A stretch of DNA of 64,000 nucleotides from Antechinus flavipes. Its lineage: Eukaryota. A program made the translations under genes and the position numbers. This document shows positions 64 through 46,100 of this stretch, in pieces (the first letter of the stretch is position 1; each line of letters opens with the position of its first letter). The notes below the pieces were generated by a model that saw only the letters and a program-made list of their open reading frames with translations, was not told the origin of the DNA and made no database searches. Location: positions 389,670,001 through 389,734,000 of the forward strand of contig NC_067399.1 in the NCBI RefSeq assembly GCF_016432865.1, in the 5' to 3' direction.

Positions 64-3000
64 GTGACTCTCCTATTCCATCTGTTTCCTCGGGATCATC
101 TTCACCCCTTTCAGCTACTTCTGCGCCACCAACATTGGGCCAGCCAAAAGGAGGCAACCCCAGTCAGGATAGAAAGGTACCTCCCCCGATTGGAACGGAG
201 AGACTTGCTCGAATTCGACAGGGAGGCTCTGTTACACCAACGCCTCTAGGAACTAATTTCACAGCACCTGTTGGACATAGTGGTATCTGGTCCTTTGGAG
301 TCAATAGTGTGTCAGGTAAGATTGTCCTATGTTCTGTAGAAGGAGTAGCTCAAGTAAGACTTTTAAAGCTAGCAGGAAATTCTTGTGATAATAGAGCTCC
401 TCTAAGTCAGGATTTCTTAAATATTTCTCGCTGGCAACCCCTCTTTGCCTAACAAATTTTTACATGAACTCCAAGTGTATAGATATATGAAATAAATAAA
501 CAAATCAAATATTTACTGATAATAAATTATAATTTTTAGCAACCTTCCACATTCAGTTATGAGAACCTTTATGAGGTTTGGAACCACAGTTTTAAGAAGC
601 TAGGCTCTTAAGTGATAGTATTTTAGAGCTGTCAACATTAAGGCTTGTTAGGTACTGTACCTTAGTACAGCTGTAATGTTTAGGTATTTAAGGTACAGCT
701 GTAATGTTGTTGTATTGTTGTGTTGATGAGTATTGAAAGCACAGAGCAGCACAGCAACTAAAAGTGATTAAAGTAAATTTCCCTTTCCCTTAAATTAATC
801 CAGAATCAAACCTTAGAGCCCCTAAGAAGACCAATTTATGTTGAACACATCTTTTGAAGAGGCCTCATGGCAATTATTAGAAAGATTATTCATAAGAATT
901 TTCTCAGTTTTCTTTGCAGACTAATCAAGCTTCTGATATAGAACAGTTCTTTTTTTTCAAAGAAAAGTCTTTTATCAAATTAATAACACATAGCCCATTT
1001 CTAATTCTTTCCAGAAGGCCTTTCTGGTTGGTCACAGCCTGTGATGGGAAGTCACCCATTACATCAGCAGCTCTCAGATGCAGGCACCTTCTCTCAGCAC
1101 CAGCCAATGGAAAGAGACGATTCAGGAATGGTGGCTCCTTCTAACATTTTCCATCAGCCTATGGCAAGCAGTTTTGTGGATTTTTCTAAAGTAAGGATAT
1201 AAAATTTCTTGAATATGGAATTGTCCATATAGACCTTTAGGAAAATCCTAACAAGTTTAAGGGTAATTTTTGTTTGTTGTGATTAAATATCCCTTTCTCT
1301 GAGATGACATAAACTCATATTTTGTCTAGTAATTTTGCTTCGTTTAGTAAGCAAGCTATATCTTTCAATATACCAGGGGCTTAAATAAATGCTAGTTGAC
1401 TATGTTATTAGAAGAAACTTATTTTGTGGAAAGAGATGTTCTCTCAAGAATTATAATGATAAAGAACTTAGATCTTGATACCAGAGTACCTGGATTTAGA
1501 TTCTGACTCTGCTACCTATTCCCTGTGTGTCTTAGCTAAATCAACTTAGCCTCCCTTGACATAATTTTCCTTTATCTGGAAATGAATTTGGTCTAGATGA
1601 TATTGTAAGTCCTTTTCTAATTCTAATTTTGTGATCTTTTGACCCCAAATTTAAATAACTTTTCAAGTTTATGAAATAATTTTTTCCCATAATAATATTA
1701 TGACATCACCCAGAGAGAGGACTTTGGGGACTAAATGTGGATCACAACATAGTATTTTCAATTTTTTTGTTGTTTGATTTTATTTTTTATTTCTCATTTT
1801 TTCCCTTTTTGATCTGATTTTTCTTGTTACAGCATGATAATTGTGAAAATATGTATAGAAGAATTGCTCATGTTTAACAAGTATTGGATTACTTGCTGTC
1901 TAGGGGAGGAAGAGAGGGAAAAATGTTTTGGAAAACAAGGTTTTGCAAGGGTGAAAGATTATTTTTAAATTATTCATATGTTTTGAAAATAAAAAGCTTT
2001 AATAAAATAAAGAATAACGAGTAAGTATGAAATTTAAAATAATAATCCTTTGAAGATAGATTAATTCACTTTTTTTTTTAATTTTGGAACATATTTTATT
2101 GGAAAAGGAGGGAATCACTACATATTTGACACAAACTATAGGACTTTATATGTAGATCTACATGGGGACATTAGTGATTTATTCTAGTTTGATGGATTGT
2201 TAACTTCACCTTCTCTATTAATGTACAAAGAGTAATAAGTTTAGAATCATAATGAATAAAATGCATGATATAGTTGCAAAAATATTGTACATTATCTCAG
2301 ACTAGGAAAATTGATTTGTGAGTTGTCTTTCTACATTCATCTAAATAAAACCTTAGTCAACTCTTGGTTTTCAATATATGGCTTAGACACGTTGGAGATT
2401 ACTTTCTTTTTTTTTTTTTTAATATTTTATTTTATTTTATGATAACTTTATATTGACAGAATCCATGCCAGGGTAATTTTTTTACAACATTATCCCTTGC
2501 TCTCACTTCTGTTCCGATTTTTCTCCTCTCTCCCTCCACCCCCTCCCATAGATGGCAAGCAGTCCTATATATGTTAGATATGTTGCAGTATATCCTAGAT
2601 ACAATATATGTTTGCAGAACCAAACAGTTCTCTTGTTGCACAGGGAGAATTGGATTCAGAAGGTAAAAATAACCCAGGAAGAAAAACAAAAATGCAAATA
2701 GTTCACATTCATTTCCCAGTGTTCTTTCTTTGGGTGTAGCTGCTTCTGTCCATCATTTATCAATTGAAACTGAGTTAGGTCTCTTTGTCAAAGAAATCCA
2801 CTTCCATCAGAATACATCCTCATACAATATCGTTGTTAAAGTGTATAATGATCTCCTGGTTCTGCTCATTTCACTTAGCATCAGTTCATGTAAGTCTCTC
2901 CAAGCCTCTCTGTATTCATCCTGCTGTTCATTTCAATAATATTCCATAACATTCATATACCACAATTTACCCAGCCATTCTCCAATTGATGGGCATCCAT

Positions 3001-4090
3001 TCATTTTCCAGCTTCTAGCCACTACAAACAGGGCTGCCACAAACATTTTGGCACATACAGGTCCCTTTCCCTTCTTTAGTATCTCTTTGGGGTATAAGCC
3101 CAGTAGAAACACTGCTGGATCAAAGGGTATGCACATTTTGATAATTTTTTGGGCATAATTCCAGATTGCTCTCCAGAATGGTTGGATTCGTTTACAACTC
3201 CACCAACAATGCATCAGTGTCCCAGTTTTCCTGCATCCCCTCCAACATTCCTCATTATTTTTTCCTGTCATCTTAGCCAATCTGACAGGTGTGTAGGGCT
3301 ATCTCAGAGTTGTCTTAATTTGCATTTCTCTGATCAATAGTGATTTGGAACACTTTCATATGAGTCGTAATAGTTTCAATTTCATCATCTGAAAATGTTT
3401 TGTTCATATCCTTTGACCATTTATCAATTGGAGAATGGCTTGGATTAATTCACATTTTGATTCTTAATAGGACTTATCTTTTTTCCTTTTCTCTTTCTAA
3501 GAATACTTCTACCACATATAGTCTTTGGACTATTTTATTTTTTGTATATATGAAAAAGATTTCTGGGCATGATCTGACAGTTGTTAAATTATTTCCTGAT
3601 TATAGATATTTTGCTTTCTGTTGTGTAGGGTCTGCCAATTTCCATGTATGGAGGTACCATAATACCCTCACATCCTCAGCTTGCTGATGGTCCAGGTGGC
3701 CCTCTGTTTAATGGACTTCATAACCCAGATCCTGCTTGGAACCCTATGATAAAAGTTGTCCAAAACTCAACAGAATGTACTGATGCTCAGCAGGTAAAAG
3801 AAATTTAATTCTTTCTCTTACCTTTCACATTTTTTCCATATTCATTTTTGACTGTAAGACATTCAGCACGAAAAATCATTTCTATCATCATGCTACCTTA
3901 GTATCAATCCACTATTACTGTGCTTTAGAATATTTTCCCCTTGGCGAAAATGATTGCCATTAAATTTATATTTTGTTTTATAAATGTATAACATTTCTAA
4001 TTGGAAGTTATGATTTTTCCCCCTTTTCAGATTTGGCCTGGCACGTGGGCACCTCATATTGGAAACATGCATCTCAAATATGTCAACTAA
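64..4090 (+). CDS. ANKHD1: Ankyrin repeat and KH domain-containing protein 1 (MASK1), last four coding exons; gene starts upstream of the window
   Basis: Exons 64-315, 1015-1190, 3629-3793 and 4031-4090, all AG/GT flanked and phase-consistent. They translate to ...DRKVPPPIGTERLARIRQGG...GIWSFGVNSVS/EGLSGWSQPVMG...FVDFSK/GLPISMYGGTIIP...TECTDAQQ/IWPGTWAPHIGNMHLKYVN*, the known ANKHD1 C-terminus. Confidence 0.97.
1705..2010 (+). mobile_element. Older L1 3'-end fragment (approximate ends)
   Basis: Resembles the L1 3' UTR segments at 34790-35100 and 57480-57845 and ends in AATAAA/A-rich sequence. Confidence 0.7.
2059..3458 (-). mobile_element. Young 5'-truncated L1 (2407-3442) with putative 3'-transduced segment (2080-2406) and TSD
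   Basis: L1 ORF2 C-terminus in ORF 2933-3280 (TGTLMHCWWSCK...WRAIWNYAQK...CPSIGEWLGKLWY). T14 at 2407-2420, second T-run at 2070-2079. GATTAATTCAC repeated at 2059-2069 and 3443-3453. Confidence 0.85.
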
Positions 4091-4512
4091 GTTAGAAGGT
4101 CTTTTTCTCTTTAGCCTTGTTTGGGAAACCCATGACCTTGGAAAAACCCTGGGGATTTTTAAAAATGTGCCTAACTAAGCAATTTTCTGTGTGGGCTTTA
4201 ACAATGGAAACTTGATTGCCCATTGTATAAGAACAAATCGATTTCTTATCCAACTGATTCTGTTCTCCAGTTAGTTTAGCCATTTTGAACTTAAAATCAG
4301 ATGAACCTAGTGCTTTTGGCTAAACAGTACTGAATGCTACTTGTCTGCAGAAGAGAACTAGATGATTACATGATTTCAACCTTTTAGGGTGGTAAATACA
4401 TGTATAATTGTTTACATACTTAAAAGGAAAAAAAAGTTGAGTAAATTTCATGTCGTATAGTGGCTCTACTTTATGTAGCCTGTATTAATGTGAAATATTT
4501 ACCTGAATATTC

Positions 4513-4518
4513 AATAAA
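4513..4518 (+). terminator. Probable ANKHD1 polyadenylation signal
   Basis: AATAAA about 420 nt after the stop codon, followed by GT/T-rich sequence. Confidence 0.65.
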
Positions 4519-7500
4519 AAGATGAACAGTATTTGGAAGTTGGTTGTGATCTTTTCATATTTAATGCATATTCACTACTGCTTGAGCAATTTCATTGTCA
4601 CTTGGACTTAATTGAGGAAATCCCTTAAAAATTAGAAGTGTTATACCTTGGACTCTGAAAAGAGAGAGGTCTTTTTAAACTAGTTTTTCAACTTGTTCAT
4701 TCGACTTAGTAACTCTGATCAATTTGTGAGCCATAAATATCATGGCCTTTTCATCAAGTGAAAGCAAAAACCCTGGCAGTGGAGCTTTATCAGATATTGA
4801 TACAGTCACCATTTTGGTAGATATGTCCAGAAAAAAAAGCAGTATTTTTGAGTCAGATAATGTTGACCAGTTTCAGACTATATTAAAATTGTGAACATCA
4901 GGTAATTTGCTTGTGCCTTGACTTTTTTAGTGGGGTGGACTCTGAGCATATTAGCACCCCTATGTACAAGTGAAATTGCTGTTTATATAATGCCAAGAAT
5001 CTGATGCAACAGTATGGGAAAGCATTAAAGTGCTAAATAGTTCAGTTGTATATTCAGGTTTAGATACAAGCAAATTTTCTGCTGCTATAGAGAGTTTATA
5101 AAAAGAGATTACCTGAAAATAATTTGGAATATGGAGAAAAGTCACACTTAGATCAACAGGATTGTAGGCGAAAGGGAAAGAGAAAGAAATAGCAGAGAAT
5201 AAGATAGGGCTGAAGGAAATCAAGTTTTAAAAGATGATGCCTCTTTAAACAGTTCTCTTATATGTTGTGAATCCTGACAATTTGGGTTGCTCTAATAATG
5301 TGGTTTTTCCCTGCCCTAGCTCTAAAATGCTTCCAATCTGAACACACAGCCATACTTTATACCATATAAAGTTAAAAGCATATTTTTAATGTCAAGCATG
5401 CCTCTTTTGTTTATACTAGAATACAATGATATTCTAGCTATCAAGCAGAACTTTTTGCTGGACTTAAAAAAAATTTTTTTTCAGATTTCAGATATAATTG
5501 CTACCTCTTCAGCAATTTTTTGGTCAAAGAAGTCATTCTCAAATTTCTTTAGCTTGAAAGGCTCTTTGAAATTCATGATGTAGTAATATGTATTACCTAT
5601 TTCCCTGTTTCCTACTTGCCACTTTAAAAAAGCAATTCACTAGAATTAATGGAGAAAGTTTTACAGCTTCAGATTAGAAAGCTAATGAGGAATAATAAGT
5701 GAAGTATATTTGCTAATAATAAACTGATCTAGCATAAATAACATTACAAAAAGCTATTTGGTGGATCACCTAATTTATTTCCCTCCTTCTTAGGTTGTAA
5801 TTACTGGAAAGTTTTGAGAGAAAGTATCTTTATCAAGACTACCTCTCTTTCTATTGAATCTAGTCCCCAATTTAAACACACTGCCACCTCCACTACTGTC
5901 ATCTTATCACTCCCAGTCCTCCCTTTTTACTAATCTCAACAGTATATAAAATAAACTGATCTTTTATTCTTAATATGTTGTCAATTGTCTCTTCTTAATC
6001 ACACATCTGGGATGAATATATTTGTTTATGGAATCAATCAAAATCCTCAGGGATTATACAGTGAAATATTTTGATTAATTAGTATTTCATATCTACTGTC
6101 TATGATGCATGTTGTAGCAAGAAACTTAATATCTACTGTCTATGGTGTATCAACTGCCTTTTCATAAAGCATTCTTCCTTCTAGTATTGGTATAAGTACA
6201 AAGGGGCCACCATTCAGCTAAGCATATGGGAAAAGGAAAAGATAATGGGAATGCTACAAACTAAAGGTTAAGAAATTTTATATCCCAGAGAAGCTCCTTG
6301 AGTTTGTTCATCTGTTCGTTCACTTAAAAGCCAAGATCCATACTAAAGAAAGTCATCTGCCACCAGCACTATCATTCCTTCCTAGGTGAATCAATGAAAA
6401 ACTTTTCAGAAGTGCTTCAAGCCAGGAACCATTCCCAGTAAGGGTCAGGTTGGAAAAAGGCAGGGGCCAGTCATTTCACAGTTCTCATCCAAACAAAATA
6501 AGTGGGTGTATTTAGTGATTGTGACCTTACTTCACTTGGTTAAGACCTTTGGATTGGATTGTTATGTTTAGGCAGCAAATCACTGAACACACTTAGGCCT
6601 CATCCCAGGCTTCTTCCATCATGAAAAATATGGTTTTACGTATGATTCCACAAAAATCCCTGGTTAAGTCACTGCTGATACTTCTAGTCATCTAAAATAC
6701 TTGACAAGGATTTGTTCCAAATATTATTTTTAAGTGACATGTAAGGAAAATTTGTCTGACCAACCTCTTTGATTATGTGAAAATTCCAACCTCTTTATGT
6801 GAAAATTAAATTTCACCTGTGAGGAGTGCAAGAGAAGACTAGAACTTGGAAATATAATACTTCAAAATCATTTCTCTTTAGTGATGGAAAAGGGGATTTT
6901 TCACTAAATTATAATGATTGCATATCCACAGAACTTTTATTTCCATCAACATTTCTTAAGAAAATGTTTTGCTCCTGAAGGAGGAAGCGCTTTTTTTTAG
7001 ATCTACATTCAACTTTTTTCTTTTTTACCCCTGGTAGAAATGGAGAAGGAAGTGGATTCTATATATTGAAAAATAACTAAAGTGTTTTAAAAAAAAGTGT
7101 CAAAAATTATTAGATAATAAATGTTAAGGGAGTTGGAGATATTTTTTGGAAAAATGATCTGGAACTGAGGCTACTATTGCATTATTGTCTGTTTCCTTTG
7201 ACCCTTGCAGTTCTTCAGACACAATAAAAAGAAGAGAAGGATAAGGCAAATGATGAGGAATGAGGACTGAGTTCAATCCAAGCAATTGTAACTTTGCCAA
7301 AATCCTTTACTGTCTTTGGGGCTTTAAAATAAAAACTAACATAAACGTTATAAGGGAAACCAAAGTGCTTTAAGGGAGGTCAGGAAAGTGTACATCTTAC
7401 CACCATCATCATCAAAGGAGAAGCCTCTACTCTTGGTATGGATGGCAATCAGTTTAGTTAGGTTAGGTATTTTGCCTTGAAGCCATGGAATGTCACTGAA

Positions 7501-7899
7501 GTGAAAGAATGAGAGTACCTTTAAAATAATACATCACTGGGAGTATTTAGGCATTCTGTAACAGGACCAAGAACAATTTTTCATCGATAGAATCAGTTCT
7601 CAATTCCTTCCTTGGGTACAACTACCACCTTCCAAAGCCTTATAGGTTTGATATCTGCTTGTCCAAAATTAGATTATTTTCCTCAGGGAGCCTCTTGGAT
7701 TAGGTTATCCCTACATTCGGTTAATTGATGAGATAATTGATAATTCTTAAAACCTTACACATTTCTTAACTATCCATACTACCTTCCTTACAATGACATC
7801 AAGTATTTAGTTAAAACCCTAACAAACTATGCATTATTTTGAGATTTAAAAAATTTCTAAGAACAAAATAAAAGCAATAAGGGGTAAATGTGGCACCCA

Positions 7900-8320
7900 G
7901 CTTGGACCCCACCCTGGAATTCTGGCCCTGCCCCAGTGGGTCCGGACTGTTGTTGCCTGGGAGCAGCACATGGTAAGGACCCAGCCCTTGCTGGTTTCCG
8001 GGCTCAGTGTCGTCCTAGCCACCAGCTCGCCAAGTCCACCTCTACTAACTGCCCGATCGCGACTGGCTGCCCCGACTGCAACAGCACCACGCCGGAGGAG
8101 GAGGGGAGGGCGGGGAGGGGGGAATGCTGTATGCCACCACCCCGGGAGGTTCAGGGATTGGGTTTAATTGGCTGTTAAAGTTTGGGACGGTCCAATTGGC
8201 CGGGATGCAGGGACTAGAGATGTAGGTAGTAAAAGTGGGCACCGGGCTAAGGGCTGACACGCCATCCGGTCTTTTTGGTCTGGTTCGCAAAGCAAACTAT
8301 TCTGGCTTCGCAGCTTAGTG
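7900..8320 (+). promoter_or_regulatory. CpG-rich promoter/first-exon region of EIF4EBP3 (approximate)
   Basis: Local GC/CpG enrichment and a GGGCGGGG box around exon 1, in AT-rich flanks. Confidence 0.55.
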
Positions 8321-10382
8321 ACCTTCAGAGCCTCACTTCTGGAAGCATATGGGAGGGCTCAGCTCTCTGCTTGCTCTCTTATGAGGCCGTTGGGAGTAAA
8401 GGGTAGCGGCCCAGGCTGTAGACTCCAAATCGAGGACCATATTTTCTGTCCCAGCCCATTTCCCACAGCCTTCCAGATGAGGCAACAGTATTGGGCACTG
8501 CAATTAGGCGAACAAGCCTGAGCTTGAGATCTCTGCTACCCGAGGGAGGCAGTGAGTTTGGCCTTGGGGCTTCAGAAGTAACCTGGGGCCTTCACTGAAG
8601 CACCTCAAAGTAAGGTAAGCTTGCTGGTGTCAGGGTAATCTCTTTAACTCTACACCTCCTTGCCCACGGCTGTGAAGCAAGAGGACTGGTGAGTGAGGGT
8701 CCAGGGTCCCAAATGAAACATGTTCAGGTGGAGGCTGCCAGGGCTTCAGATGGATGGTAACAGCTACGGGATTAGTTAGAGAACCCAAGATCCTAAATTG
8801 GACTGCTGCCCAATTCCTCCCAGGGGAAACCGAAGGAAGGGAAGGGGAAGGAAAGAAAGGCACAGGGCATTCTAATGTACTACTGCCCAGCCAAGGTCTC
8901 AGGCCGAGGCTTTTAGGAATTGAGGACCCAGATGAATACTCTTAGGATAAGATTTTAGGCCCCTCTTGGAATAGCCTCCCTACTGCTTACAGCCAGATTA
9001 AGGAGCTTATTCTCAAACCCTCTGTGCTCCACACTCCCTACTCTCTCACCCTTTCACCCCACATAGTACAAAGGTAGGAAAAGCAAGCCCCTCCTCCATT
9101 CTACACCCTCCTTTGGAAAAGGGATTTATCCTATGAGAGAATTGTCAGATAAGTACACATTTAATACCTCCCCCTAAAAATTTTATTTTCCATGATAACA
9201 AAGATACTGATCTTGTGAAGTTGTATTAGACTGAAAACTACTAAAGCAAAGCTTCCTAAATTGTCCCATTTTATATACTATGGGTTACATAAAATTTCTC
9301 AGGTGAAAAGGGGTGGTAAGATTTAAGAAGCCCAGCATTAGTGGACAGTAAGACACAAGTGTGCAGCTTTCAGACATTGCCCAGGTGACCCAAATTCCTC
9401 TTTTCTCATCCAGGTGTGAGGGAGGGGAATGCTGGTGTATACACACATGCTATTCCAGCACAAAAACATGTTCCTTTGCAGGAAACAATTTGAAGCTGAG
9501 CTCTGTTCTAGAAAAGAGAGGTGGTCATGCACAAAAAGGCATTAGTTATTTCATAGAACTAGAGATGGAAGCATTTATCTAGACGAGTCTCTCAGAGAAG
9601 GAAACTGATGATCTAAAAGATTGGGGTTTTTTTTGTTCAGTTATTCCCAGAGGCAGCCAGTTAGTTTTAGGAAGAATTAGAGTTTAGGCAAGACACTACA
9701 ATTCAGTTCCATAGAATCCCAACTTCCATAATTCACTCCCTGCAGGAACTAGAATCGTCTATGATCAAAAATTTCTGCTGGAATGTAAGAATTTGCCCAT
9801 TGCCTGGACACCACCTTGCTACCTCCCCCAGATCCCTGGGGTCATTGTCCCATCACAAGCCCCACTTGCCCAACTGGAGGAATTAAAGGAGCAGAAAGAA
9901 ATTGAAGAGCTCCTAGGTAAAAGGAGGAATTACAGGAAATATTAAAAATGATATGCACTGGTAACTTAAAAGTTTCAGAGAGAAAGAATTAAACTTTATT
10001 AAAAGACCCCTTTATGTTCACCATGGATTATACTTTTGCTTTAGCTATCTAGCTGTAGTGATAGTGTTCAGGAGAAAATAGAAAAATGTTTTTTCTATTA
10101 GACATTAAAAAACTTTAATAGTAAAAGTTGCCCTGACTTACAAAAGAAGGAATGCAGAAAATTGTCCTCCTTTCCAAGTACTCAGGTAGTAGAGAGGCTA
10201 GTTCTAAGTGAGGTCTGGGCTAGTCTTGACCATAACTATAGAGCAACTTCTAGCTGAAAAAGAGTTTTAAGGGAAGGAGGCAGAGGCAAGAAGGCTTAAT
10301 GGTATAGTAAGAAATCAAGGCAATCTAACTATCAGGGTCCTCTTTCACTCCAGATGAGGTACAATTTGAAATGGACAACTGA
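8032..10382 (+). CDS. EIF4EBP3: eIF4E-binding protein 3; exon 1 degenerate (possible pseudogene, or N-truncated 74-aa product from ATG 8124)
   Basis: Exon 2 9746-9916 ([32 protein letters not shown]...LEELKEQKE) and exon 3 10354-10382 (DEVQFEMDN*) are intact. Exon 1 has GCC-AAG-TCC-ACC at the expected ATG position and a G-rich insertion that shifts frame before LYATTPGG; donor at 8148/8149. Confidence 0.85.
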
Positions 10383-12184
10383 CCTGGAATATTTGACCCT
10401 GTTAACAACTTCCCCAGTCATGAGAAAGGGCTTATTTTTGGTGGCTCCTTCAGTCCTTCAAAGTGATTGAGACCAAGGTGAGGGGAAGGGCAGGTTTAGA
10501 TATGGGTTGAGAGTAGAAGGTGCTAATTCTAGGAATGGAGGCTATGTGAATTTGGAAGTTCCTTGCTGAACTTTAATATTCAGTTCTTTCTCTTCTTCTG
10601 CACTTGGGCCAATTGTGGGATTGGATGCTGCACCCTATCAATGCTTAATAAACACAATGAAAGATTTCCCCTGGGTCACATGTTTTCTTCACCTTATCCA
10701 CATTGCTTTCTTCTGAGGGGGAAAAGACATTGCTATACTACCTCAGGTCATCCTGAAGTCAGAATAAATAATTCTTGTCCCATAATACTCTGCTTCTAAG
10801 ATTGGGCCCCATTCCAGCTACAATCAAATGAAACCAAGGGTTAGGAGCAAGGGCCAGCAGGAGTGGTACTGTAAAGAGTAAGAGCTTGGCACCTGCCAAG
10901 GGTTGTTCTGTTCCAGGAAATAGCCTTCCTCTTCTGAACCTCTACTATAATTCTGCTCTAATCCCTACCTGCTATTTTAATGTGGGATATCTTCCCTTAG
11001 GCAAAGGTCATTTGGGATTATCCTCCTTTTGGGGTCATTATCACAGAATGTTAGTAATGGAAAGAATCTTACAGAAATCTATATAGAGAAAATTTTTCAC
11101 CCAAGGTTACATACATAGTAAAGAACAAAGCTGGAGTCAAACTTGAAATTTCTGAAAACAAAGTATTTTCCTTTCTTCAGCAATCAGGAAGGTAGCTTTC
11201 TGGATTCCTTTCCATCACCTGCCATTTGATTACCAAGATTCATTAATCTCTTTTCTATTCTAAACACCTAGTGCTCCCCAACTTCTCTGATTTCTCCTAA
11301 CACCTGGTCCACCATGACTTCAGCTGTTTAGGCCAGACAGAACCATTTTAGGTCTTCCTGTTGTTTCTCCTTTTGGCCATCTGGAGCAAATGGAGCAGTG
11401 AGGTCCAGAATCGGTGCCTGAGAATGCTAGAACCTAGAAGAATCCTGTAGTGATAAGCTTCCTGACTTCCTTATCCTCCTGGCTCCTGAAGCAGCCCTGG
11501 CAATAAACTGCCCATTTTAATAAGTTCAGCTCTATTGACTTTGCTGGGAAGGGAAGGGTCAACACTTCTCTTCCAACTATCTTCACTTTCTCCATGCCCA
11601 GTCTTAGGAAAGGGACAAGGTGATCACTTATTTCCAAGTTTCTGTTCTTTCTCACTTTGCAACCAAACTAAAAAACACGGCTACTAGACTCACCTATGGA
11701 TGTTTACATCTTCTTTATCGTGTCACTTGAAAATTTCTATAGGGCAGGTTAATGTTAAACTACATCTATTAAGAAAGAAAAAGAACTAGAATTAAGATTT
11801 CAAAAAAGCTAAGAACCTTTATGTGTGAGACCTGTATTTCTAGATGGCTCGAAGACAAATGATTTTGAGAATAAAAGTCCCCAATGCCCCACCAAAAAAT
11901 ACCACGGTACAAGAAATTTTTATTTAATTGCATATGTCAGAAGCAACCATGAACTGCCAATAGTCTTCCCTCCCGAGTCAGGGCAAAGTCCTAGTTGGAG
12001 TTGGAGCTGCTTCTCTGCTAAAAGAGAATTTCCTTTCCCTTTTTCCAACTCCTGTTGGTATCAAGGAAGCCAAGCAAACATAGGTCCCTGGAGCCTAAAC
12101 CCTGCCAGGTCCCATTCAAAGATAGTTCAAGGTCTAGGACAGTGGGGGATATAGGAACTGACGGGGGAGGAAGAAAATAGTGGA

Positions 12185-15100
12185 TCACAGAGTTGCAGAG
12201 AGGCCTGAGACGACCTCATTCTCCTCTGTAGTAGTAGGCTTCTCCGCAGCTTCCCCTGCAGGCAGGCTCCTCCTTTCTGCAATTAACCTTTTCACACCCA
12301 CCATCCATTGACTGACCTCAGTCACATGATCCACCATCAGTGATCGATGTATGTCATCAGCTCCATCCCAGTTGTGGTTCCTGAGCTCTAAGAGAAGACA
12401 GACCCTGAGTATAATACAGTGCTTCCCCTCCACACAAAGACTGTTCCTCTGAATATTTAATAAATGGTCACATTTCTATAGAGCTTTAAGGCTTACAAAA
12501 TGTTTCCAATGAATCGGAAGTATTATTTTGTAGATGAGGAAATATATTCAGAGAGGTAAGAGTATTTCCGATAGCCTAGATTTGAGCTGTCTTGATTCCA
12601 AGCACAGTACTGATTCAATTTATTTCCACTATATGCTGCTGCCTCTCTAGTAGACTATTCCCTAGACTGACTCAAACCAATGCTCTTTTGGCCAAAGAGA
12701 CCTAATGGCAGAATTCAAGGGCATTCTGAGGTCCTGAATGTGGCTCACCTTGCACCAGTAGTGCCATCCTCTTCCTCACAGGAACTGACAGCTTCTCACT
12801 CTTCCACTGTCCTTGAAGCAAGGCTAGGCGCCGGCTGATGTCATCAAAGATCTGTTTCTGAGCACACAGACACTCTTTCCAAGTCAAAGCTCTAATCTGC
12901 CTTTTTGTTTTCCCTTCACAATACTCCCAATTGTGGTCTTTTCTTTTATTCCTACCACCTATACCATCCTACAAATCCCTTTCTTCCTTAGAGTTCAATT
13001 CCTCTAGAGAATTATTGTGAGGCACCTTGGACAGAGCAGAAGGGTTCCCTCCTAAGACAAAACCAAGGTAATGTGTGTAATGTTTGGAAACACATTACCA
13101 GGTTCTGCTCTGTTTCACGTTAAAGAGCACATAACTAAGTATAATTCCAACAGCTGAAGGGGGAATAGAAGGAACAAGAAAATATAGAATTCAGGGTTGA
13201 AAGAGACCTTAGTGGTTATCTAGTACCACGTCTGGCATATTTTGTTGATGAAAACAGTCTCAGAGAGAGGTATTATGATTTATCTAAAGTCACATTGAAG
13301 TGGGATTTGAACACAAGTATTCATTATTCCTAATCTAGTATTCTTTTTACAAAAGAATTCTTACCTCATTTTACTTTCAATTTTCTTAAAATTGTGGTTC
13401 CCGACTCCCATATGGAATCTTGTAACTTAAGGTGGGAGTTGTGAAATTATTATTTATTATTAGTAAATGTTTGATTTATACTTTTTTTTTTAAATATACC
13501 CATATGCCCAGGGTCATGTACAAATTTCTCAGGTGAAAAGGGGTAGGGAGTCACTAGTGGAAAAAGTTCAAGAAGCCTTGACTTATACTCTGCTGCCCAG
13601 GTTTAATTTGGCACCTACCCAATCTAGTTCCTTCTTTATAAAAAGTGAAGAGAATTTCACTACTCCCTTTTAGGAATGGGGAGAGGGAGATTCAATTTAA
13701 GTAAAAAAAGCAAAAGGAATACATAGATAGATGTGATACAGCCTTGTCCCCAAGAGAGTGGCTTATGATCTTAGTCATTCCCCAGCTCAACTTCCATCAT
13801 GAAACCTGGGCTCCCTGGGGCCTTACCTGTGTATGAGAACGGCAATCCTCCAAAGCCTGTTCCAAGGGTCCCAGCACATCTTCTAGCATGGTTTCACAAG
13901 TGACTGAAGAACTGGCGGGTTCCAACTTCAAGGGAGAAGAGTTTCCCCCAAGGGGAGGCCCTGTAGTCTTTGTCAGGAGTGGTGGAGGTCCCACTGGAGG
14001 AGCCCCAGTAAAAGGTTCTGAGGTAGGCACTGAGAAAAGGTAAATCAACGTGTTGACAACACTACTGAGCATTATGGCCCTAACTGTATGACAGACATAA
14101 CCAGTTTATGACAGACATAACCAGTTTCGTTCTCTCACTGCCCCCACCAGGGCCCTTTCCTATAAGCTAAGGAATATTAATGAAAACCAAAGAATATTCC
14201 TCAACTTTTCCTAGTCAATGGCCCCAAGTCTAGATAGCTGGAAGGGGAGGAACAGAGAAGGGAGAAATAGGAAAATTTTTCATTCAGGATCTCAAACTGG
14301 AACCCTGTACATTTCTCCATTTAAAACCCCATAAGAACAAGAACTACTCAATAAACCAAAAACTATTTTAGGTTTGGGAAGTCTGTATCAATGTCCAAAG
14401 ACAACAAACTGAATCTAAATCATAACTTTTTAGCAAGAATATCCCAAATGGCAACACAAAGGGATGTCTTCGGGAGAACAGAAAAAAGAATCAGAGGCCA
14501 AAACCTCCTGAATAAAAGAAACACAGGCAATTCTCCCCTAATCACAATGGAAATTTGAACTGGACTCACAAATGCTCACCTTTTGGAGAACCATCCTGGG
14601 GAGCTGCAACCCGCTTAGTCAGTGGTGTCCTCTTATGACTGCTACCCTGGGTCTGCAACCCATAAGAGAATTGTGGAGGGTCATTCCAGCCTCTATCCTT
14701 GTTTCCTGAAATAGAAGGCAAAAGTGGAAAGAGGAAAATTGGAGAAAAAGCAAGAATTAAAGTGGGGAGGAGAGGATACAGTAATGAAAAGGACGGAGGA
14801 GGGGGGAAGAAAAAATTAGGAAAAAGAAAGGAATGTGAAAGCACTGAAGACAAAAACAAAAGACATGATGATAAGAGGAAAGACAGAAAACGTGAAGAAA
14901 GGGGAGAGGGAAGATGAGGCTCCAAGAGAAGAAAGGAAGAAAAGGAAAATGAAAAGGGAAGAAGCAAGAGGAGAAAAAAGGGCGGGGGAGAGGAGAGGAA
15001 AAGAGAAGGCGGGAGGGAAGTGAGGGGGGAAGAAGGTGAGGAGGAAAGATAGAAGGGGAGGAGAGGGGAGATAATAAAATTGGGAGGGGAGTGTGGAGAA

Positions 15101-15377
15101 GGGAAAAGAAGAAGGATTGAAGAGGAAAAAGGAATTGGAGGGCAAAGAGGGAGAGAAGGTTGAGGGAGAAAGCTGGGAGGGGAAAGATGGGACTGACAAC
15201 AGACATACCCTGCACCTCAGCATCCCCCTAACCATCCTGCCACCAAGTCTAGTCAACCCCATCCCTCCCCACCTCATACCCGGCCTGCCCTCGCCTGAGT
15301 CCTCCAGCCCCGGTGCTAAGAGGAGGCTCTAAAGGCGCAGAGCCCAGCTCACCCGGCTTCACGTACAGCTCCGCCAT
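12185..15377 (-). CDS. SRA1: Steroid receptor RNA activator 1 protein (SRAP), 221 aa, 5 coding exons
   Basis: Exons 15377-15353 (MAELYVKP), 14705-14580 ([18 protein letters not shown]), 14029-13827, 12857-12749 ([14 protein letters not shown]) and 12387-12185 ([38 protein letters not shown]). Total 666 nt, canonical splice sites. Confidence 0.97.
14706..15190. repeat. Purine-rich (GA) low-complexity tract in SRA1 intron 1
   Basis: About 480 nt strongly dominated by A/G on the + strand (polypyrimidine on the SRA1 transcript strand). Confidence 0.85.
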
Positions 15378-15520
15378 CGCCTCACTTCCGCACGGCCAAC
15401 GAGGCAGTGGTGGGGTCACTTCCGGAGGCGGGCCACGCCGTGCTACTCTGCTTCTCATTGGGCTGTCTCCAAGCTTGCGCTCCGCAAGCTCCACCCATCC
15501 TCTCGAACAGGGGCTGGCGA
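15280..15520 (-). promoter_or_regulatory. SRA1 CpG promoter with ETS-type motifs (approximate)
   Basis: CpG-rich; two CACTTCCG (ETS/GABP) motifs and a GGCGGG box just upstream of the ATG. Confidence 0.6.
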
Positions 15521-28846: not shown

Positions 28847-29282
28847 TCCACCTTCAGCACTCCTCCCTCCAGGTCATCTTTAGGAGGGCTCTCTTGAGGA
28901 AGACTTGGAATCTGGGTCATCATGGATAGGCAGCACACCTGACTGTATAGTTATCAAGGATAAAGTCAGGCTCTCTTGCCCTATATCCAGCTTCCCCAGA
29001 ATTTTAATTGCCTCAGCTGCTCCAGACCACAGATATTTTCTCCTTGTCCTATACCTGTATCCTTCCTTCTTCCCATCAGCATCTGTGCTTCTAAACTGTG
29101 TGTATGTTCAAACCTGCTTTTTCCACTACTGATTATCCTATGGCATACTTAGTTTCTTATCAATTTGATAATGTAGGAGCTGGCTCCATCACTCAATTTT
29201 ACCAGATGGACTGTAGACTTCCCCCCCACTCTTATCTTTGCCATTACTTACCTACCTAAAAGCCTAGGTTGGTGGAGTGGGG

Positions 29283-30245
29283 ATGAATGTGGAAGAAGGG
29301 GGCATACCGGGCATAGGGCGCCCAAGCCAGGCCCGATGGGTGCTTATGCTTCTTCTGTCCACGACCATGTATGGTGCCCACGCCCCACTGTTGGCCTTGT
29401 GTCGAATAGATGGCCGTGTCCCTTTCCGCCCCTCTTCAGCTGTGCTTTGGACGGAACTGACCAAATTACTGCTATCAGCATTCTCCCTGATGGCCCGGCG
29501 GCAGCCCAGACTGTGGGACTCTCTCCCGTGGCGCCAGGCTGCCCCTTTTGCACTCTCTGCACTGCTCTACGGTGCCAACAATAACCTCGTCATTCACCTG
29601 CAGCGGTATATGGATCCCAGCACCTACCAAGTGATGAGCAACCTCAAGATTGGCAGCACAGCTCTCCTTTACTGCCTCTGCCTGAACCGCCGTCTCTCTG
29701 CCAGACAGGGGCTGGCCCTGCTGCTGCTGACTGGTGCCGGAGCCTGCTATGCCGCCGCAGGCCTGCAGGATCCGCAAGGCCTCCTCCCTCCCCCGCCAGC
29801 TGCGGCCATGCCCCTCCACGTGACCCCCCTGGGGCTGCTGCTGCTGCTCCTCTACTGCCTCATCTCGGGACTCTCCTCAGTCTACACCGAGCTGCTCATG
29901 AAGAGGCAGCGCCTGCCCCTGGCCTTGCAGAACCTGTTCCTGTACTCCTTTGGGGTACTTATGAACTTGGGGCTCTATGTGGGAGGTGGGCCAGGCCCTG
30001 GGCTCCTAGAAGGCTTCTCAGCCTGGGCAGCATTGGTGGTTCTGAGCCAGGCCCTCAATGGACTGCTCATGTCAGCCATCATGAAGCATGGGAGCAGCAT
30101 CACCCGGCTCTTTGTCGTCTCCTCTTCCCTGATTGTCAATGCTGTGCTCTCAGCCACCCTGCTTCACCTCCAGCTCACGGCTGCCTTCTTCCTGGCCCTC
30201 CTGCTTATTGGACTGGCTGTACATCTCTATTATGGAGGCCGGTAG
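29283..30245 (+). CDS. SLC35A4: Probable nucleotide-sugar transporter SLC35A4, 320 aa, intronless main ORF
   Basis: MNVEEGG...ARWVLMLLLSTTMYGAHAPLL...GANNNLVIHLQRYMDPSTYQVMSNLKIGSTA...MKHGSSITRLF; multi-pass hydrophobic pattern. The ORF-track start at 29277 is a GTG; first ATG is 29283. Confidence 0.96.
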   Translation: MNVEEGGIPGIGRPSQARWVLMLLLSTTMYGAHAPLLALCRIDGRVPFRPSSAVLWTELTKLLLSAFSLMARRQPRLWDSLPWRQAAPFALSALLYGANNNLVIHLQRYMDPSTYQVMSNLKIGSTALLYCLCLNRRLSARQGLALLLLTGAGACYAAAGLQDPQGLLPPPPAAAMPLHVTPLGLLLLLLYCLISGLSSVYTELLMKRQRLPLALQNLFLYSFGVLMNLGLYVGGGPGPGLLEGFSAWAALVVLSQALNGLLMSAIMKHGSSITRLFVVSSSLIVNAVLSATLLHLQLTAAFFLALLLIGLAVHLYYGGR

Positions 30246-43100: not shown

Positions 43101-46100
43101 ATGTGACAACATACAAACAACAATAACAAACTTTTAAAAAGTTTAAGAATGCTGATCAACAGATGCCATGATTTATCTTGACTCCAGAGGACTCATGATA
43201 AAACAGGCTGACCACTTCCTGACCAGAGATGAAAAAATGAAGGCCCATATTGCAACACATTTTTGTAGACATGTCCAAAGCAGGTATTTGTTATGACTTT
43301 TAAATGGACTGCTTTAAGGCAGAGGCAGCTTGGTCTAGTGGACAGAGTGCTGGATTTGCAGTCTATAACACCTGGGTTCAAATCCTACAGTGACAAGCTG
43401 GGCCACGATGCCTAAAATACTTAATATTGCTGAGCCTCCTAAGGCAAATTTGTGTAAATTATAAACAGGTTAAGTATATCTCCTTTGTATACTTTAAATA
43501 ACAGGAAATTCTGCTAAAAATTGTTTTGTTTGTCTTTCCTTTTTCAATGGGGAATAAGTGGGAAGGGAGAGAAAGTGAATTCTTGTTAATTGAAAAAATG
43601 AAATTAAATTTAAAAAGTAAGGAATAAGATGATGAGATCAGATGTTAGGTTGCAATAATATTCAGAATACTTATCTTTTTTCCTTCAAGATAAACAAGTA
43701 TCCAAATAAATAGTTATTAGTGTATTGAAGTTTGAGTATAGTGTTTGAGATAAACGCAGGACTAAAAGGAATACCTCGTAAACCTAGGAAGGAACATAGT
43801 AGGGAAACATCTTTCAAAGAAGATGGAGATCTAGGAATACCTTAGGTGGTATATGTACTCCTGGCCATACTCTTTACTTCCCCTTGAAAATTTGAAACTT
43901 GTTACTGTTCACTGAAGTCTTTGACCTCTGATTCTTTGAAACAGAACTTTATATCACAAAAATCCCTGCTGCAATAGAAAATAGAATTTTCCATTAAATA
44001 TATAAAGGAGATAGACTTTTAACATATAATTTACACAGATTGCCTGAGGAGGTTCAGCAATATTGTGTCTTAGGCATGATGGCCCACTTTGTCACTGTAA
44101 GATTTAGAACCCGGATGTTTTAAACTGCAAGTCCAGCATTCTGTCCACAAGACCAAGCTACCACTGCCTTAAAATAGACCATTTTTAAAAAGCCATAGTA
44201 AAGTGTTCCTCTTTGTATCCCTAGTGGTTGCTTGTCCTCTTGCCTACTTCTAGTTCTGTACCAGCTTTGGAATCAAGTGCATTGTGAAAGGATGCTGTAA
44301 GAAGAATAAAGAGCCTGCGCCCCAGAGCCAACTTGTGTGCATTGTGATGAGATGCCCATCTCAAGGTGGAGGAAACTGGAGCCAGATACCTGCAGCTTTG
44401 GAAGCCTGGTTACAGAAGCTCCAGCCTGCTTGAGCATCCTGGTCTCCCAGCTCCGGCTTTGGTTTTTCAGTACCTGTAAATAGCAGGTTCAGTGCATAAT
44501 TTTCAGAGCCCCCAATACCCCACATGGAGGGCTGGTGCCTGGTTCTTTCTCACCTTCAATTCCCTGAGCACCAGGCTCAGCTGAGTAAGCTGGCTCTCCT
44601 GTAGAGCTGTTCCAGAGAGCTCAGAACGCAGGGCCTGAACAGTGGCGTAGCGGGTGTGGATTTCTTCTGAAGCATCCCACAGTGTGGGAGAAATCTGCTT
44701 CCCCTGGCGGGGGTCCCGAACTCCTTCGGCCCCTGCTAGCGAGGCCAGGAGCAGACCCAAGGGGATGGCTGCCAGAGAATACAGGCAGGCAGTGGGGCCA
44801 CTTTAGGTGAGGGGGGGGGGGGCTTTAATATAGTCAAAGAACAATCCTGTCCCCTCCTCCCAACCTCTCTTGCCAAGAATCACACTGAGCAGCCTCTTTC
44901 CACAAGACTAGCACTGAGTAAGAAGCCTGGATGAGGAGAAATGCAGAGGCCGAAGCAGGATTTGGGAGCAGAACTTCCTGGTGACTCTCCCCAGAAAGGA
45001 TTAAGTCTCATTTCCTGTCTTTTTTTCCTACCCTCCCTTCCTTCCTTCATACCTCGGAGATCCAAGAGAAGCAACAGGCTGTTGTAACTATTTCCAAAGA
45101 GTAACTGAGTCATGATCCAAGGCAAGGAGCCGGTATGGGCCTTGGAAGCCTTCCCTGCCAGTACCAGCAATAAGGGGCAGTCCCTACAAAGAGTGATGGC
45201 TAAGGTCAGGCACAGCTTAGGTCCTTGTTATGGGTTAGGGAGAATAACTGCCCCTTATGTGGAAACCTCAAGCTGCTGCCCTGGGCTTCCCCCCAAGTTG
45301 GACTCACAGAGCTTCTGGAAGCTGCAAAACTCTCAGTGAGCCCCTCCACATGCTCTGGCCCAGGGCCTCTTTATGGTACTGGGCCCCAGGCAGGATATTG
45401 TCAAGGTAAGAAGGGAGCAGGCTCTGGAAGAGAAGATGGTTAAGTTTGTGGCATTTCTTCTTAGATTGATCTCTAAGTTTGTATCTCCTTCTCTCATCCT
45501 TTCTGCCAGAGTCCACAGGTTCATATACCTGTCCAAGCCTTCCATTGCCCTGAGATAAAGTTGGCAGCCAGATTTGGAATCTAGGATCTCTGCTTCACTC
45601 GCTCCTTCTGCTACTCTGGGGAAAAAAGGGAAAAATATAAGTTTGACGTGTTTCTGGACTCTGTCCCTCTGCCATAGGACCCTTCAAAGCATTAAATCCC
45701 AGACATAAGAACAAAATGAGCAGGTAACCCATAGTCACATAGACAGACTAAGCCTGAATAGGACANNNNNNNNNNNNNNNNNNNNNNNNNNNNNNNNNNN
45801 NNNNNNNNNNNNNNNNNNNNNNNNNNNNNNNNNNNNNNNNNNNNNNNNNNNNNNNNNNNNNNNNNNNNNNNNNNNNNNNNNNNNNNNNNNNNNNNNNNNN
45901 NNNNNNNNNNNNNNNNNNNNNNNNNNNNNNNNNNNNNNNNNNNNNNNNNNNNNNNNNCCACAGAACAAAACCCAGTAGTAAGGCTGTTGTCAGAATGGGG
46001 AGGAAGGAAGAGCAGTACTAAGAAAAGATATTCACATCCTGGACAAAGTAGCATACTTACAGACCCAGTGGGGACACATCCAGGAAATTCAGGTCGCTAG

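What the first reader, a model, noticed from the sequence alone, without database searches (positions are those of the whole stretch)
8032..10382. 4E-BP3 has lost its start codon and regulatory motifs but keeps the eIF4E-binding core
Seen: the position equivalent to the start codon reads AAG (8032-8034). A 29-nt G/A run (8095-8123) shifts the old N-terminus out of frame, and a new ATG at 8124 is in frame ([20 protein letters not shown]...FEMDN*, 74 aa). Established: 4E-BPs bind eIF4E via YxxxxL-phi and are released by mTORC1 phosphorylation at sites equivalent to 4E-BP1 T37/T46/S65/T70, with help from the C-terminal FEMDI TOS motif. Here the T37-like site is out of frame, the S65-like NSP is NLP, TOS is FEMDN and YDRKFL is YDQKFL, while exons 2-3 have no stops. 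Inference: either early pseudogenisation or a shortened, poorly phosphorylatable translation repressor.
Basis: partly seen in the sequence, partly recalled or inferred. Interest (0 to 1): 0.7.

Follow-up and report, generated by a model that had tools for sequence, protein, structure and literature searches.

The report
Dead 4E-BP3 gene in dasyurid marsupials
This is the marsupial copy of the translation-repressor gene EIF4EBP3, and it is a dead gene: its start codon was already lost in the common ancestor of this species and the Tasmanian devil, so the remaining 74-codon reading frame is most likely a chance leftover, not a new repressor.

Summary
The old start is AAG at 8032-8034. A G/A-rich run at 8095-8123 shifts the frame. 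ATG 8124 opens a spliced 74-aa frame (8124-8148 / 9746-9916 / 10354-10382) with YDQKFLL, NLP and FEMDN. A 5.9-kb short-read contig of the same species matches exon 1 exactly, so this is not an assembly error.

The window is from a dasyurid marsupial that is not the devil. The devil's orthologous locus carries the same ATG>AAG change. It lacks the 23-base insertion and has its own lesions: a 4-base deletion in exon 1, a 1-base insertion in exon 2 giving a stop, and a 9-base deletion.

The exons differ between the two species as much as the introns or more (12-17% against 9-10%). Replacement and silent changes on both branches fit neutrality. ATG 8124 is a CpG transition (ACG>ATG).

Freedom from stops in exons 2-3 is expected by chance about half the time. 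No usable RNA data were available.

Verdict: a lineage-specific unitary pseudogene. The truncated-repressor reading is unlikely (about 7%).

In passing: Monodelphis has an independent in-frame stop in exon 1, and marsupial 4E-BP3 evolves under relaxed constraint generally.

The parts
7967..7972 (+). Promoter-proximal E-box position. It reads CACATG here and CACGTG in Trichosurus, Gracilinanus and two close relatives of the window species.
   Evidence: 7970 A>G in runs X3 and X9. In human the tandem E-boxes CAGCTG CACGTG near the start site mediate TFE3 induction of EIF4EBP3 (PMC4915159). Homology of this site to the human element is inferred from position only.
8032..8148 (+). Remnant of EIF4EBP3 exon 1, running from the former start codon to the donor site (GT at 8149-8150).
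   Evidence: It is homologous to exon 1 of Trichosurus (L001:6001-6103) and Gracilinanus (L002:6001-6103).
8032..8034 (+). Former start codon, ATG>AAG. The same change is present in the Tasmanian devil.
   Evidence: No in-frame ATG lies upstream before the stop at 7975-7977.
8094..8123 (+). G/A-rich low-complexity run that holds 23 bases absent from the devil, Trichosurus, Gracilinanus and three eutherians. Together with a 9-bp deletion near 8069/8070 it shifts the frame by +2.
   Evidence: Tandem Repeats Finder reports 8094-8120, period 5 (GGAGG), 5.4 copies. Confirmed in the short-read contig of run X1.
8124..8126 (+). New ATG, made by ACG>ATG (a CpG transition) at the Thr codon of TLYATTPGG. 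It opens the 74-aa frame. The context is G at -3 and C at +4.
   Evidence: All six other species compared have AC[G/A] at this codon.
9746..9916 (+). Exon 2. It encodes the eIF4E-binding core (YDQKFLL), NLP at the S65-like site, WTPP at the T70-like site, and IPGVIV at the non-canonical motif.
   Evidence: It differs from the devil at 11.7% of aligned sites, against 9.0-9.9% in the flanking introns.
10354..10382 (+). Coding part of exon 3, DEVQFEMDN plus the TGA stop. The TOS-like motif FEMDI has become FEMDN.

Best explanation
The locus is the orthologue of EIF4EBP3, lying between ANKHD1 and SRA1, and it is a unitary pseudogene in dasyurid marsupials.

Shown: the start codon became AAG before the window species and the Tasmanian devil diverged. 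The ancestral frame then held no methionine codon before the C-terminal FEMDI, so no 4E-BP3 could be made. Afterwards each lineage decayed on its own.

- The window species gained a 23-base microsatellite-like G/A insertion, a 9-base deletion, and replacements at otherwise invariant residues.
- The devil gained two frameshifts, a 9-base deletion, and loss of the C-terminal FEMDI.

Inferred: the 74-codon frame from ATG 8124 is a by-product of one CpG transition in an already dead gene. It makes no functional repressor. The intact splice sites and the stop-free exons 2-3 simply reflect the small target size and the moderate time elapsed.
For: (1) Orthology and synteny. The ANKHD1 C-terminal exon ends at 4090. 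SRA1 exons lie at 12185-15494 on the minus strand. The same gene order is seen in Trichosurus, Gracilinanus, devil and Monodelphis. Pfam PF05456 scores 79.8 bits.

(2) The lesions are real. The short-read contig of the same species is identical over exon 1.

(3) AAG is shared with the devil. The devil has independent lesions: a 4-bp deletion, a 1-bp insertion giving TGA, and a 9-bp deletion. The UniRef devil model P0009 equals the frameshift-bridged translation and contains no Met, so an independently produced devil gene model, evidently made on another devil sequence, agrees. No gene is called there in the devil annotation.

(4) Window-devil divergence is 17% in exon 1, 11.7% in exon 2 and 17% in exon 3, against 9.0% and 9.9% in the introns.

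(5) Branch counts are 12 replacement / 7 silent on the window branch and 18 / 8 on the devil branch. Neither differs from the neutral expectation of 0.69-0.75 replacement. Together they reject omega 0.33 (p=0.002) and 0.1 (p=1e-11). Eutherian pairs give omega 0.06-0.16.

(6) The chance of no stop in exons 2-3 after 19 random substitutions is 0.49, and the chance of no indel is 0.31.

(7) Close relatives carry a further T>I change at the T70-like codon (9809 C>T).

(8) No protein of 41-130 aa from the window's own annotated genome appeared in the homologue search, although its CD14 is annotated.
Against: - No transcript or ribosome data could be examined. The only RNA-labelled run is from a distant relative and looks like genomic DNA, with unspliced, intergenic cover.
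- All four splice signals, the stop codon position and a purine at -3 of ATG 8124 are intact.
- The canonical YxxxxL-phi motif, the T46-like site and the T70-like site survive.
- The window-branch counts are few (19 changes). An omega of about 0.33 cannot be rejected for this branch alone (p=0.08).
- The point estimate of 0.56 is below 1.
Confidence: 0.86

Rival explanations
1. Re-started gene. After the start loss, the new ATG 8124 rescued translation of a 74-aa N-terminally truncated 4E-BP3. This protein would still bind eIF4E through YDQKFLL and IPGV. Lacking the T37-like and S65-like sites and a canonical TOS motif, it would act as a weakly regulated, near-constitutive repressor. It would be functionally similar to caspase-truncated 4E-BP1.
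For: - An open 74-aa frame with intact splice signals and an acceptable start context.
- A Pfam eIF_4EBP match of 79.8 bits.
- The canonical motif and the T46- and T70-like sites are kept.
- The window branch has no indel in exons 2-3, whereas the devil has two.
Against: - The gene was already start-less in the common ancestor with the devil.
- The ATG is a single CpG transition.
- On the part of the window branch that lies in the frame there are 8 replacement and 4 silent changes, several at positions invariant from coelacanth to eutherians: T>I in PGVT, K>Q, P>L and I>N in FEMDI.
- Exon divergence is not below intron divergence.
- Stop- and indel-free survival has a chance probability of about 0.15.
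- The conserved CACGTG upstream is altered. If transcribed, the change adds an out-of-frame ATG at 7970 whose frame overlaps ATG 8124.
Confidence: 0.07
2. Exons 2-3 persist because they serve as 3' exons of an ANKHD1 read-through transcript. This would resemble human MASK-BP3/ANKHD1-EIF4EBP3, which joins ANKHD1 exon 33 and an intergenic exon to EIF4EBP3 exon 2 in another reading frame. On this view only the 4E-BP3 frame is dead.
For: - The human fusion is documented (PMC6862657 citing Poulin 2003).
- In the window, the frame that starts with the first base of exon 2 is open for 46 codons. It ends at the same position as in three eutherians.
- The splice acceptor of exon 2 is intact in the window and in the devil.
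Against: - That frame is interrupted by stops in Trichosurus, Gracilinanus and Monodelphis, so it is not conserved in marsupials.
- The devil's 1-bp insertion and 9-bp deletion disrupt it.
- Exon 2 is not more conserved than the introns.
- The longest annotated ANKHD1 products in four marsupials end about 4 kb upstream.
- I could not check which frame the human fusion uses.
Confidence: 0.05
3. Sequencing or assembly artefact. On this view the real gene has ATG at 8032 and an in-frame exon 1, and the G-run is a mis-assembled homopolymer-rich stretch.
For: G-rich low-complexity runs are error-prone. The contigs of two related species break or diverge in this stretch (runs X3 and X9).
Against: - An Illumina-type contig of the same species at depth 32 reproduces 7000-9319 without any gap.
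- The devil assembly shares AAG.
- The frame shift is 14 bases net, not a one-base homopolymer slip.
Confidence: 0.01

Closest known systems
EIF4EBP3 (4E-BP3) of other mammals, e.g. Trichosurus vulpecula P0002, Notamacropus eugenii P0001, Elephas P0004
   Same: - The same genomic position between ANKHD1 and SRA1.
- The same three-exon structure and splice phases.
- 73-78% identity over the 74 residues.
- A Pfam eIF_4EBP match.
- The YxxxxL-phi core.
   Different: - No start codon at the orthologous position.
- A frameshift in exon 1.
- Replacements at the S65-like site, in the PGVT motif and in FEMDI.
- No purifying selection.
Tasmanian devil EIF4EBP3 remnant (L006, minus strand; UniRef model P0009)
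   Same: - The same ATG>AAG.
- The same stem changes: S>L at the S65-like site, R>W, P>S, T>I, and probably R>Q (the devil now reads E there).
- It is not called as a gene in the devil annotation of L006.
   Different: The devil has its own 4-bp deletion, 1-bp insertion, 9-bp deletion and FEPGS ending. It has no 23-base insertion and no new ATG. Its frame therefore contains no methionine codon at all.
N-terminally truncated 4E-BP1 made by caspase cleavage (Tee and Proud 2002, cited in PMC4915159)
   Same: This is what the 74-aa product would resemble if it were made: a 4E-BP without its N-terminal regulatory part that still carries the eIF4E-binding core. Such a protein is expected to be poorly phosphorylated and dominant-inhibitory.
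   Different: That fragment is produced post-translationally from a functional gene, and its key loss is the RAIP motif, which 4E-BP3 never had (PMC8558276). Here the truncation is genomic, sits in a decaying gene, and has no evidence of expression.
Human ANKHD1-EIF4EBP3 (MASK-BP3) read-through gene
   Same: The same neighbouring genes, and the same exons 2-3 that could serve as acceptors.
   Different: No evidence of read-through here. The alternative frame is not conserved among marsupials.

Membership tests
4E-BP family (Pfam PF05456 eIF_4EBP) | Significant sequence match to the family profile | tested here: met
   79.8 bits against a cut-off of 24, covering profile positions 39-116 of 117. 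Intact orthologues score 109-127 bits.
4E-BP family (Pfam PF05456 eIF_4EBP) | Canonical eIF4E-binding motif YxxxxL-phi | tested here: met
   YDQKFLL is present. The R>Q change at the third position is also seen in Monodelphis. Binding was not measured.
4E-BP family (Pfam PF05456 eIF_4EBP) | Non-canonical lateral-surface motif PGVT(S/T), with its Val (PMC8558276) | tested here: inconclusive
   The motif reads IPGVIV. The Val is kept, but the following Thr, nearly invariant elsewhere in the alignment, is Ile.
Functional mTORC1-regulated 4E-BP3 gene | Start codon and uninterrupted reading frame through exon 1 | tested here: not met
   AAG at 8032, and a net +14 frameshift. Confirmed in an independent contig.
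Functional mTORC1-regulated 4E-BP3 gene | Four proline-directed phospho-sites equivalent to 4E-BP1 T37, T46, S65 and T70 | tested here: not met
   The T37-like STTP lies outside the new frame. The S65-like site is Leu. The T46-like and T70-like sites are present.
Functional mTORC1-regulated 4E-BP3 gene | C-terminal TOS motif FEMDI | tested here: inconclusive
   The motif reads FEMDN. Ile is kept in every aligned sequence that retains this ending; only the devil remnant and an alternative Gracilinanus isoform differ. Whether Asn abolishes Raptor docking was not tested.
Functional mTORC1-regulated 4E-BP3 gene | Purifying selection on the coding sequence | tested here: not met
   Exon divergence from the devil is at least as high as intron divergence. 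The replacement/silent counts fit neutrality.
Unitary (lineage-specific) pseudogene | Orthologous position, with no functional copy elsewhere implied by the lesion pattern | tested here: inconclusive
   Synteny is met. A second EIF4EBP3 copy elsewhere in this genome could not be searched. None appeared among the proteins.
Unitary (lineage-specific) pseudogene | A disabling lesion shared by related species, plus independent later lesions | tested here: met
   AAG is shared with the devil. The indels differ between the two lineages.
Unitary (lineage-specific) pseudogene | No functional transcript or protein | not testable with these tools
The single RNA-labelled run found was from a distant relative and was DNA-like.

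The most novel reading that the evidence does not exclude
A dead gene came back. After millions of years without a start codon, a CpG transition created ATG 8124 behind a frame-restoring insertion. The window species would now make a 74-aa 4E-BP3 that binds eIF4E but escapes most mTORC1 phosphorylation, which would be a natural, constitutively active translation repressor.
Probability: 0.06. Interest if true: 0.7.

Novelty: new member of a known kind. Interest (0 to 1): 0.3.

Why it matters
4E-BP3 is the least understood of the three mammalian 4E-BPs. In human cells it is the TFE3-induced arm of the response to prolonged mTORC1 inhibition (PMC4915159).

The gene is nearly invariant in eutherians. 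It is dead in at least two dasyurids, independently stopped in Monodelphis, and relaxed in other marsupials. This says the arm is dispensable in a whole mammalian clade.

That is useful for people who use opossum, dunnart or devil as models of growth control, cancer or lactation. It also matters for curators, because public protein sets contain bridged 'proteins' for these pseudogenes.

It is an ordinary kind of event, gene loss, not a new mechanism. I found no paper reporting it.

Tried and rejected
- **Expression from public reads.** Its contigs cover introns and intergenic DNA and run unspliced across intron 2, so it says nothing about transcription.
- **Exon 1 in close relatives.** The contig of organism B ends at 8038. 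That of organism D replaces 8100-8176 by 65 unlike letters. Most difference rows were not printed. I therefore could not tell whether AAG, the insertion and ATG 8124 occur in those species.
- **Direct look-ups of devil and wallaby 4E-BP3 proteins.** These failed. The devil locus was reached by a detour through SRA1.
- **Sminthopsis.** The locus could not be fetched, because isoforms X2 and X3 of SRA1 are not on record. The age of the start loss within Dasyuridae is therefore open.
- **The read-through alternative frame as a reason for exon 2-3 survival.** Rejected as the main explanation, because that frame is broken in three other marsupials and in the devil.
- **Assembly error.** Rejected.
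- **Branch models.** No codon-model likelihood test (PAML or RELAX) was available. Counts with binomial tests were used instead.

Full report
**What is in the sequence**

The region 8032-10382 holds the three exons of an EIF4EBP3 orthologue on the + strand. The position of the start codon reads AAG (8032-8034). From there the frame gives [39 protein letters not shown].

A 29-nt run at 8095-8123 is G/A except for one C. It precedes an ATG at 8124 that lies in the +2 frame relative to 8032. The splice signals are all present: GT at 8149-50, AG at 9744-45, GT at 9917-18 and AG at 10352-53.

Joining 8124-8148, 9746-9916 and 10354-10382 gives 225 nt, that is 74 codons plus TGA: [29 protein letters not shown]...DEVQFEMDN. 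The product matches Pfam eIF_4EBP at 79.8 bits, against 109-127 bits for intact orthologues.

**Surroundings and organism**

- The C-terminal coding exons of ANKHD1 lie at about 3629-3793 and 4031-4090 on the + strand.
- SRA1 exons lie at 12185-15494 on the minus strand.
- SLC35A4 is at 29277-30245 and CD14 at 48651-49790 on the minus strand.
- This is the gene order of the human 5q31.3 region. The same ANKHD1-EIF4EBP3-SRA1 order is seen in the loci of Trichosurus, Gracilinanus, devil and Monodelphis.

The window's CD14 is 90% identical to that of Sarcophilus harrisii and 87% to that of Sminthopsis. The window therefore comes from a dasyurid marsupial that is not the devil.

**The lesions relative to intact marsupial genes**

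Aligned with exon 1 of Trichosurus (L001) and Gracilinanus (L002), the window shows five changes:

- ATG>AAG at the start codon;
- a 9-bp deletion;
- TAC>AAC in CYSTTP;
- 23 additional G/A-rich bases, for a net change of +14 and hence a frameshift;
- ACG>ATG at the Thr codon of TLYATTPGG.

The extra bases are a microsatellite-like array (GGAGG, 5.4 copies). ACG>ATG is a C>T change in a CpG, the commonest mutation type in mammals (established knowledge).

**Not an artefact**

One run search and one read-laying run were allowed. A 5903-nt contig from run X1 (the same species, depth 32) covers 7000-9319. It has two single-base differences, at 7912 and 8667, and no gap. It therefore reproduces the AAG, the run and the ATG.

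**The decisive comparison**

The devil locus was obtained through its SRA1 gene (L006, EIF4EBP3 on the minus strand). The devil has the same AAG. It lacks the 23-base insertion. It has its own lesions:

- a 4-bp deletion in exon 1, a frameshift that gives a stop;
- a 1-bp insertion in exon 2, which leads to ...CYLPPDP-stop;
- a 9-bp deletion;
- FEPGS in place of FEMDI.

The UniRef devil 'protein' P0009 is exactly the translation obtained by hopping across both frameshifts, and it contains no methionine. An independently produced devil gene model, evidently made on another devil sequence, therefore agrees. The annotation of L006 calls no gene between SRA1 and ANKHD1.

The start codon was thus lost before the two lineages split. 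The ancestral frame had no other Met before the C-terminal FEMDI, so the gene was already dead then.

**Mode of evolution since the split**

Window-devil divergence at aligned sites is 4.4% upstream, 9.0% in intron 1 and 9.9% in intron 2. It is 17% in exon 1, 11.7% in exon 2 and 17% in the coding part of exon 3.

Changes were polarised with Trichosurus, Gracilinanus and three eutherians:

| Branch | Silent | Replacement |
|---|---|---|
| Stem | 6 | 7 |
| Window | 7 | 12 |
| Devil | 8 | 18 |

The neutral replacement fraction for this sequence is 0.69-0.75, depending on transition bias. Neither terminal branch differs from it. Together they reject omega 0.33, the Trichosurus-Gracilinanus value (p=0.002), and omega 0.1, the eutherian value (p=1e-11).

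The window branch alone rejects 0.1 (p=4e-5) but not 0.33 (p=0.08). This is the main statistical weakness.

Replacements on the window branch hit positions that are otherwise invariant or nearly so from coelacanth and caecilian to eutherians. These are T>I in IPGVT, K>Q in KLEELK, P>L, and I>N in FEMDI. Two close relatives carry yet another loss, T>I at the T70-like codon (9809 C>T).

**Is the stop-free state of exons 2-3 informative?**

It is not. Nineteen random substitutions, the number separating the inferred ancestor from the window in exons 2-3, leave the frame stop-free in 49% of simulations. The intron indel rate predicts 1.2 indel events per 200 bp per lineage, so the chance of none is 0.31. 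The joint chance is about 0.15. The devil, with two indels in exon 2, shows the expected alternative outcome.

**Rivals**

*A re-started, truncated repressor.* This would resemble caspase-truncated 4E-BP1, and expression data do not exclude it, because none could be obtained. It requires a rescue of an already dead gene, and the frame shows no constraint. The conserved upstream CACGTG is also changed to CACATG. If transcribed, that would add an out-of-frame ATG at 7970 whose frame runs past 8124. I give this rival about 7%.

*Retention of exons 2-3 for an ANKHD1 read-through transcript.* The model is human MASK-BP3 (PMC6862657). The other frame is broken in Trichosurus, Gracilinanus, Monodelphis and the devil. 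I give this rival about 5%.

*Assembly error.* It is excluded.

**Comparison with what is known**

By sequence the remnant belongs to the 4E-BP family. It keeps the canonical YxxxxL-phi motif, part of the non-canonical motif, and the T46- and T70-like sites.

It fails the features of a functional, mTORC1-regulated 4E-BP3 gene. The start codon is gone, the frame is broken, and the T37- and S65-like sites are lost. The TOS motif is altered, and there is no purifying selection.

4E-BP3 has no RAIP motif in any species (PMC8558276). The analogy with RAIP-less truncated 4E-BP1 is therefore loose.

I found no paper on loss of EIF4EBP3 in marsupials.

**Wider pattern, followed up only partly**

Monodelphis has an in-frame TAA at the Tyr codon of TLYATTPGG in exon 1. 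It also has changes in the core: [16 protein letters not shown] and IPRV. The UniRef model P0008 silently omits the stop. The NCBI product called at that locus (132 aa) has no eIF_4EBP hit.

The Trichosurus and wallaby genes are open but carry YNRKFLL and, in wallaby, TTLGG. Marsupial omega is about 0.33, against 0.06-0.16 in eutherians.

No 4E-BP3 protein of 41-130 aa was returned for koala, wombat, Dromiciops, Petaurus, bilby, Sminthopsis or the window species, although their CD14 proteins are in the same database. This is only suggestive. Recurrent loss under clade-wide relaxed constraint is the most interesting lead that comes out of this work.

**Verdict**

It is a lineage-specific unitary pseudogene of a known gene, of modest interest.

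Noticed in passing
L007 (Monodelphis domestica), reverse strand; exon 1 starts at reverse-complement position 5973: Monodelphis EIF4EBP3 has an in-frame TAA at the Tyr codon of TLYATTPGG, plus several replacements in the eIF4E-binding core. This inactivation is independent of the dasyurid one. Gracilinanus, another didelphid, is intact.
   Followed up: partly
P0008 and P0009 (UniRef models for Monodelphis and Sarcophilus): Public protein entries named '4E binding protein 3' for these species are bridged translations. They skip a stop codon (P0008) or two frameshifts, and P0009 starts with Lys. They represent pseudogenes, not proteins.
   Followed up: yes
Alignment; pairwise values: Marsupial 4E-BP3 evolves under relaxed constraint in general. 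Omega is about 0.33 for Trichosurus-Gracilinanus, against 0.06-0.16 among eutherians. Diprotodontians carry YNRKFLL, and the wallaby has TTLGG at the T46-like site. No 4E-BP3 of normal length was returned for six other annotated marsupials.
   Followed up: partly
window 7967-7972; devil reverse-complement of L006 about 5570-5580: A CACGTG E-box about 60 bp upstream of the old start is conserved in Trichosurus, Gracilinanus and two close relatives. It lies where human EIF4EBP3 has its TFE3-responsive E-boxes. It is CACATG in the window species. In the devil it is disrupted, next to a deletion of about 22 bp.
   Followed up: partly
window 9809: Two related species (runs X3 and X9) have T instead of C, changing the T70-like Thr codon to Ile. 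The more distant relative (X20) and the window keep C. With 9858, this makes two sites whose pattern conflicts with the divergence order of the four species (homoplasy or lineage sorting).
   Followed up: no
window 2083-3442: About 1.36 kb is absent from the devil. Window 1299-2082 and 3443-6287 abut in the devil locus. This fits the L1 insertion noted earlier, and places it just upstream of the last two ANKHD1 coding exons as a window-lineage event.
   Followed up: partly
window 3629-3793 and 4031-4090 (+): These are the last two coding exons of ANKHD1. They read ...GLPISMYGG...TDAQQ and IWPGTWAPHIGNMHLKYVN-stop. The ANKHD1 stop lies 3.9 kb upstream of the old EIF4EBP3 start.
   Followed up: partly
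run X20 laid on window 7000-11000: A run labelled metatranscriptomic RNA covers introns and intergenic DNA of a related marsupial evenly, at a depth of about 5, and runs unspliced across intron 2. It behaves like host genomic DNA and should not be used as evidence of expression.
   Followed up: yes
window 45766-45957: A run of 192 N (a gap or masked stretch) inside the kinesin-like gene noted by others.
   Followed up: no
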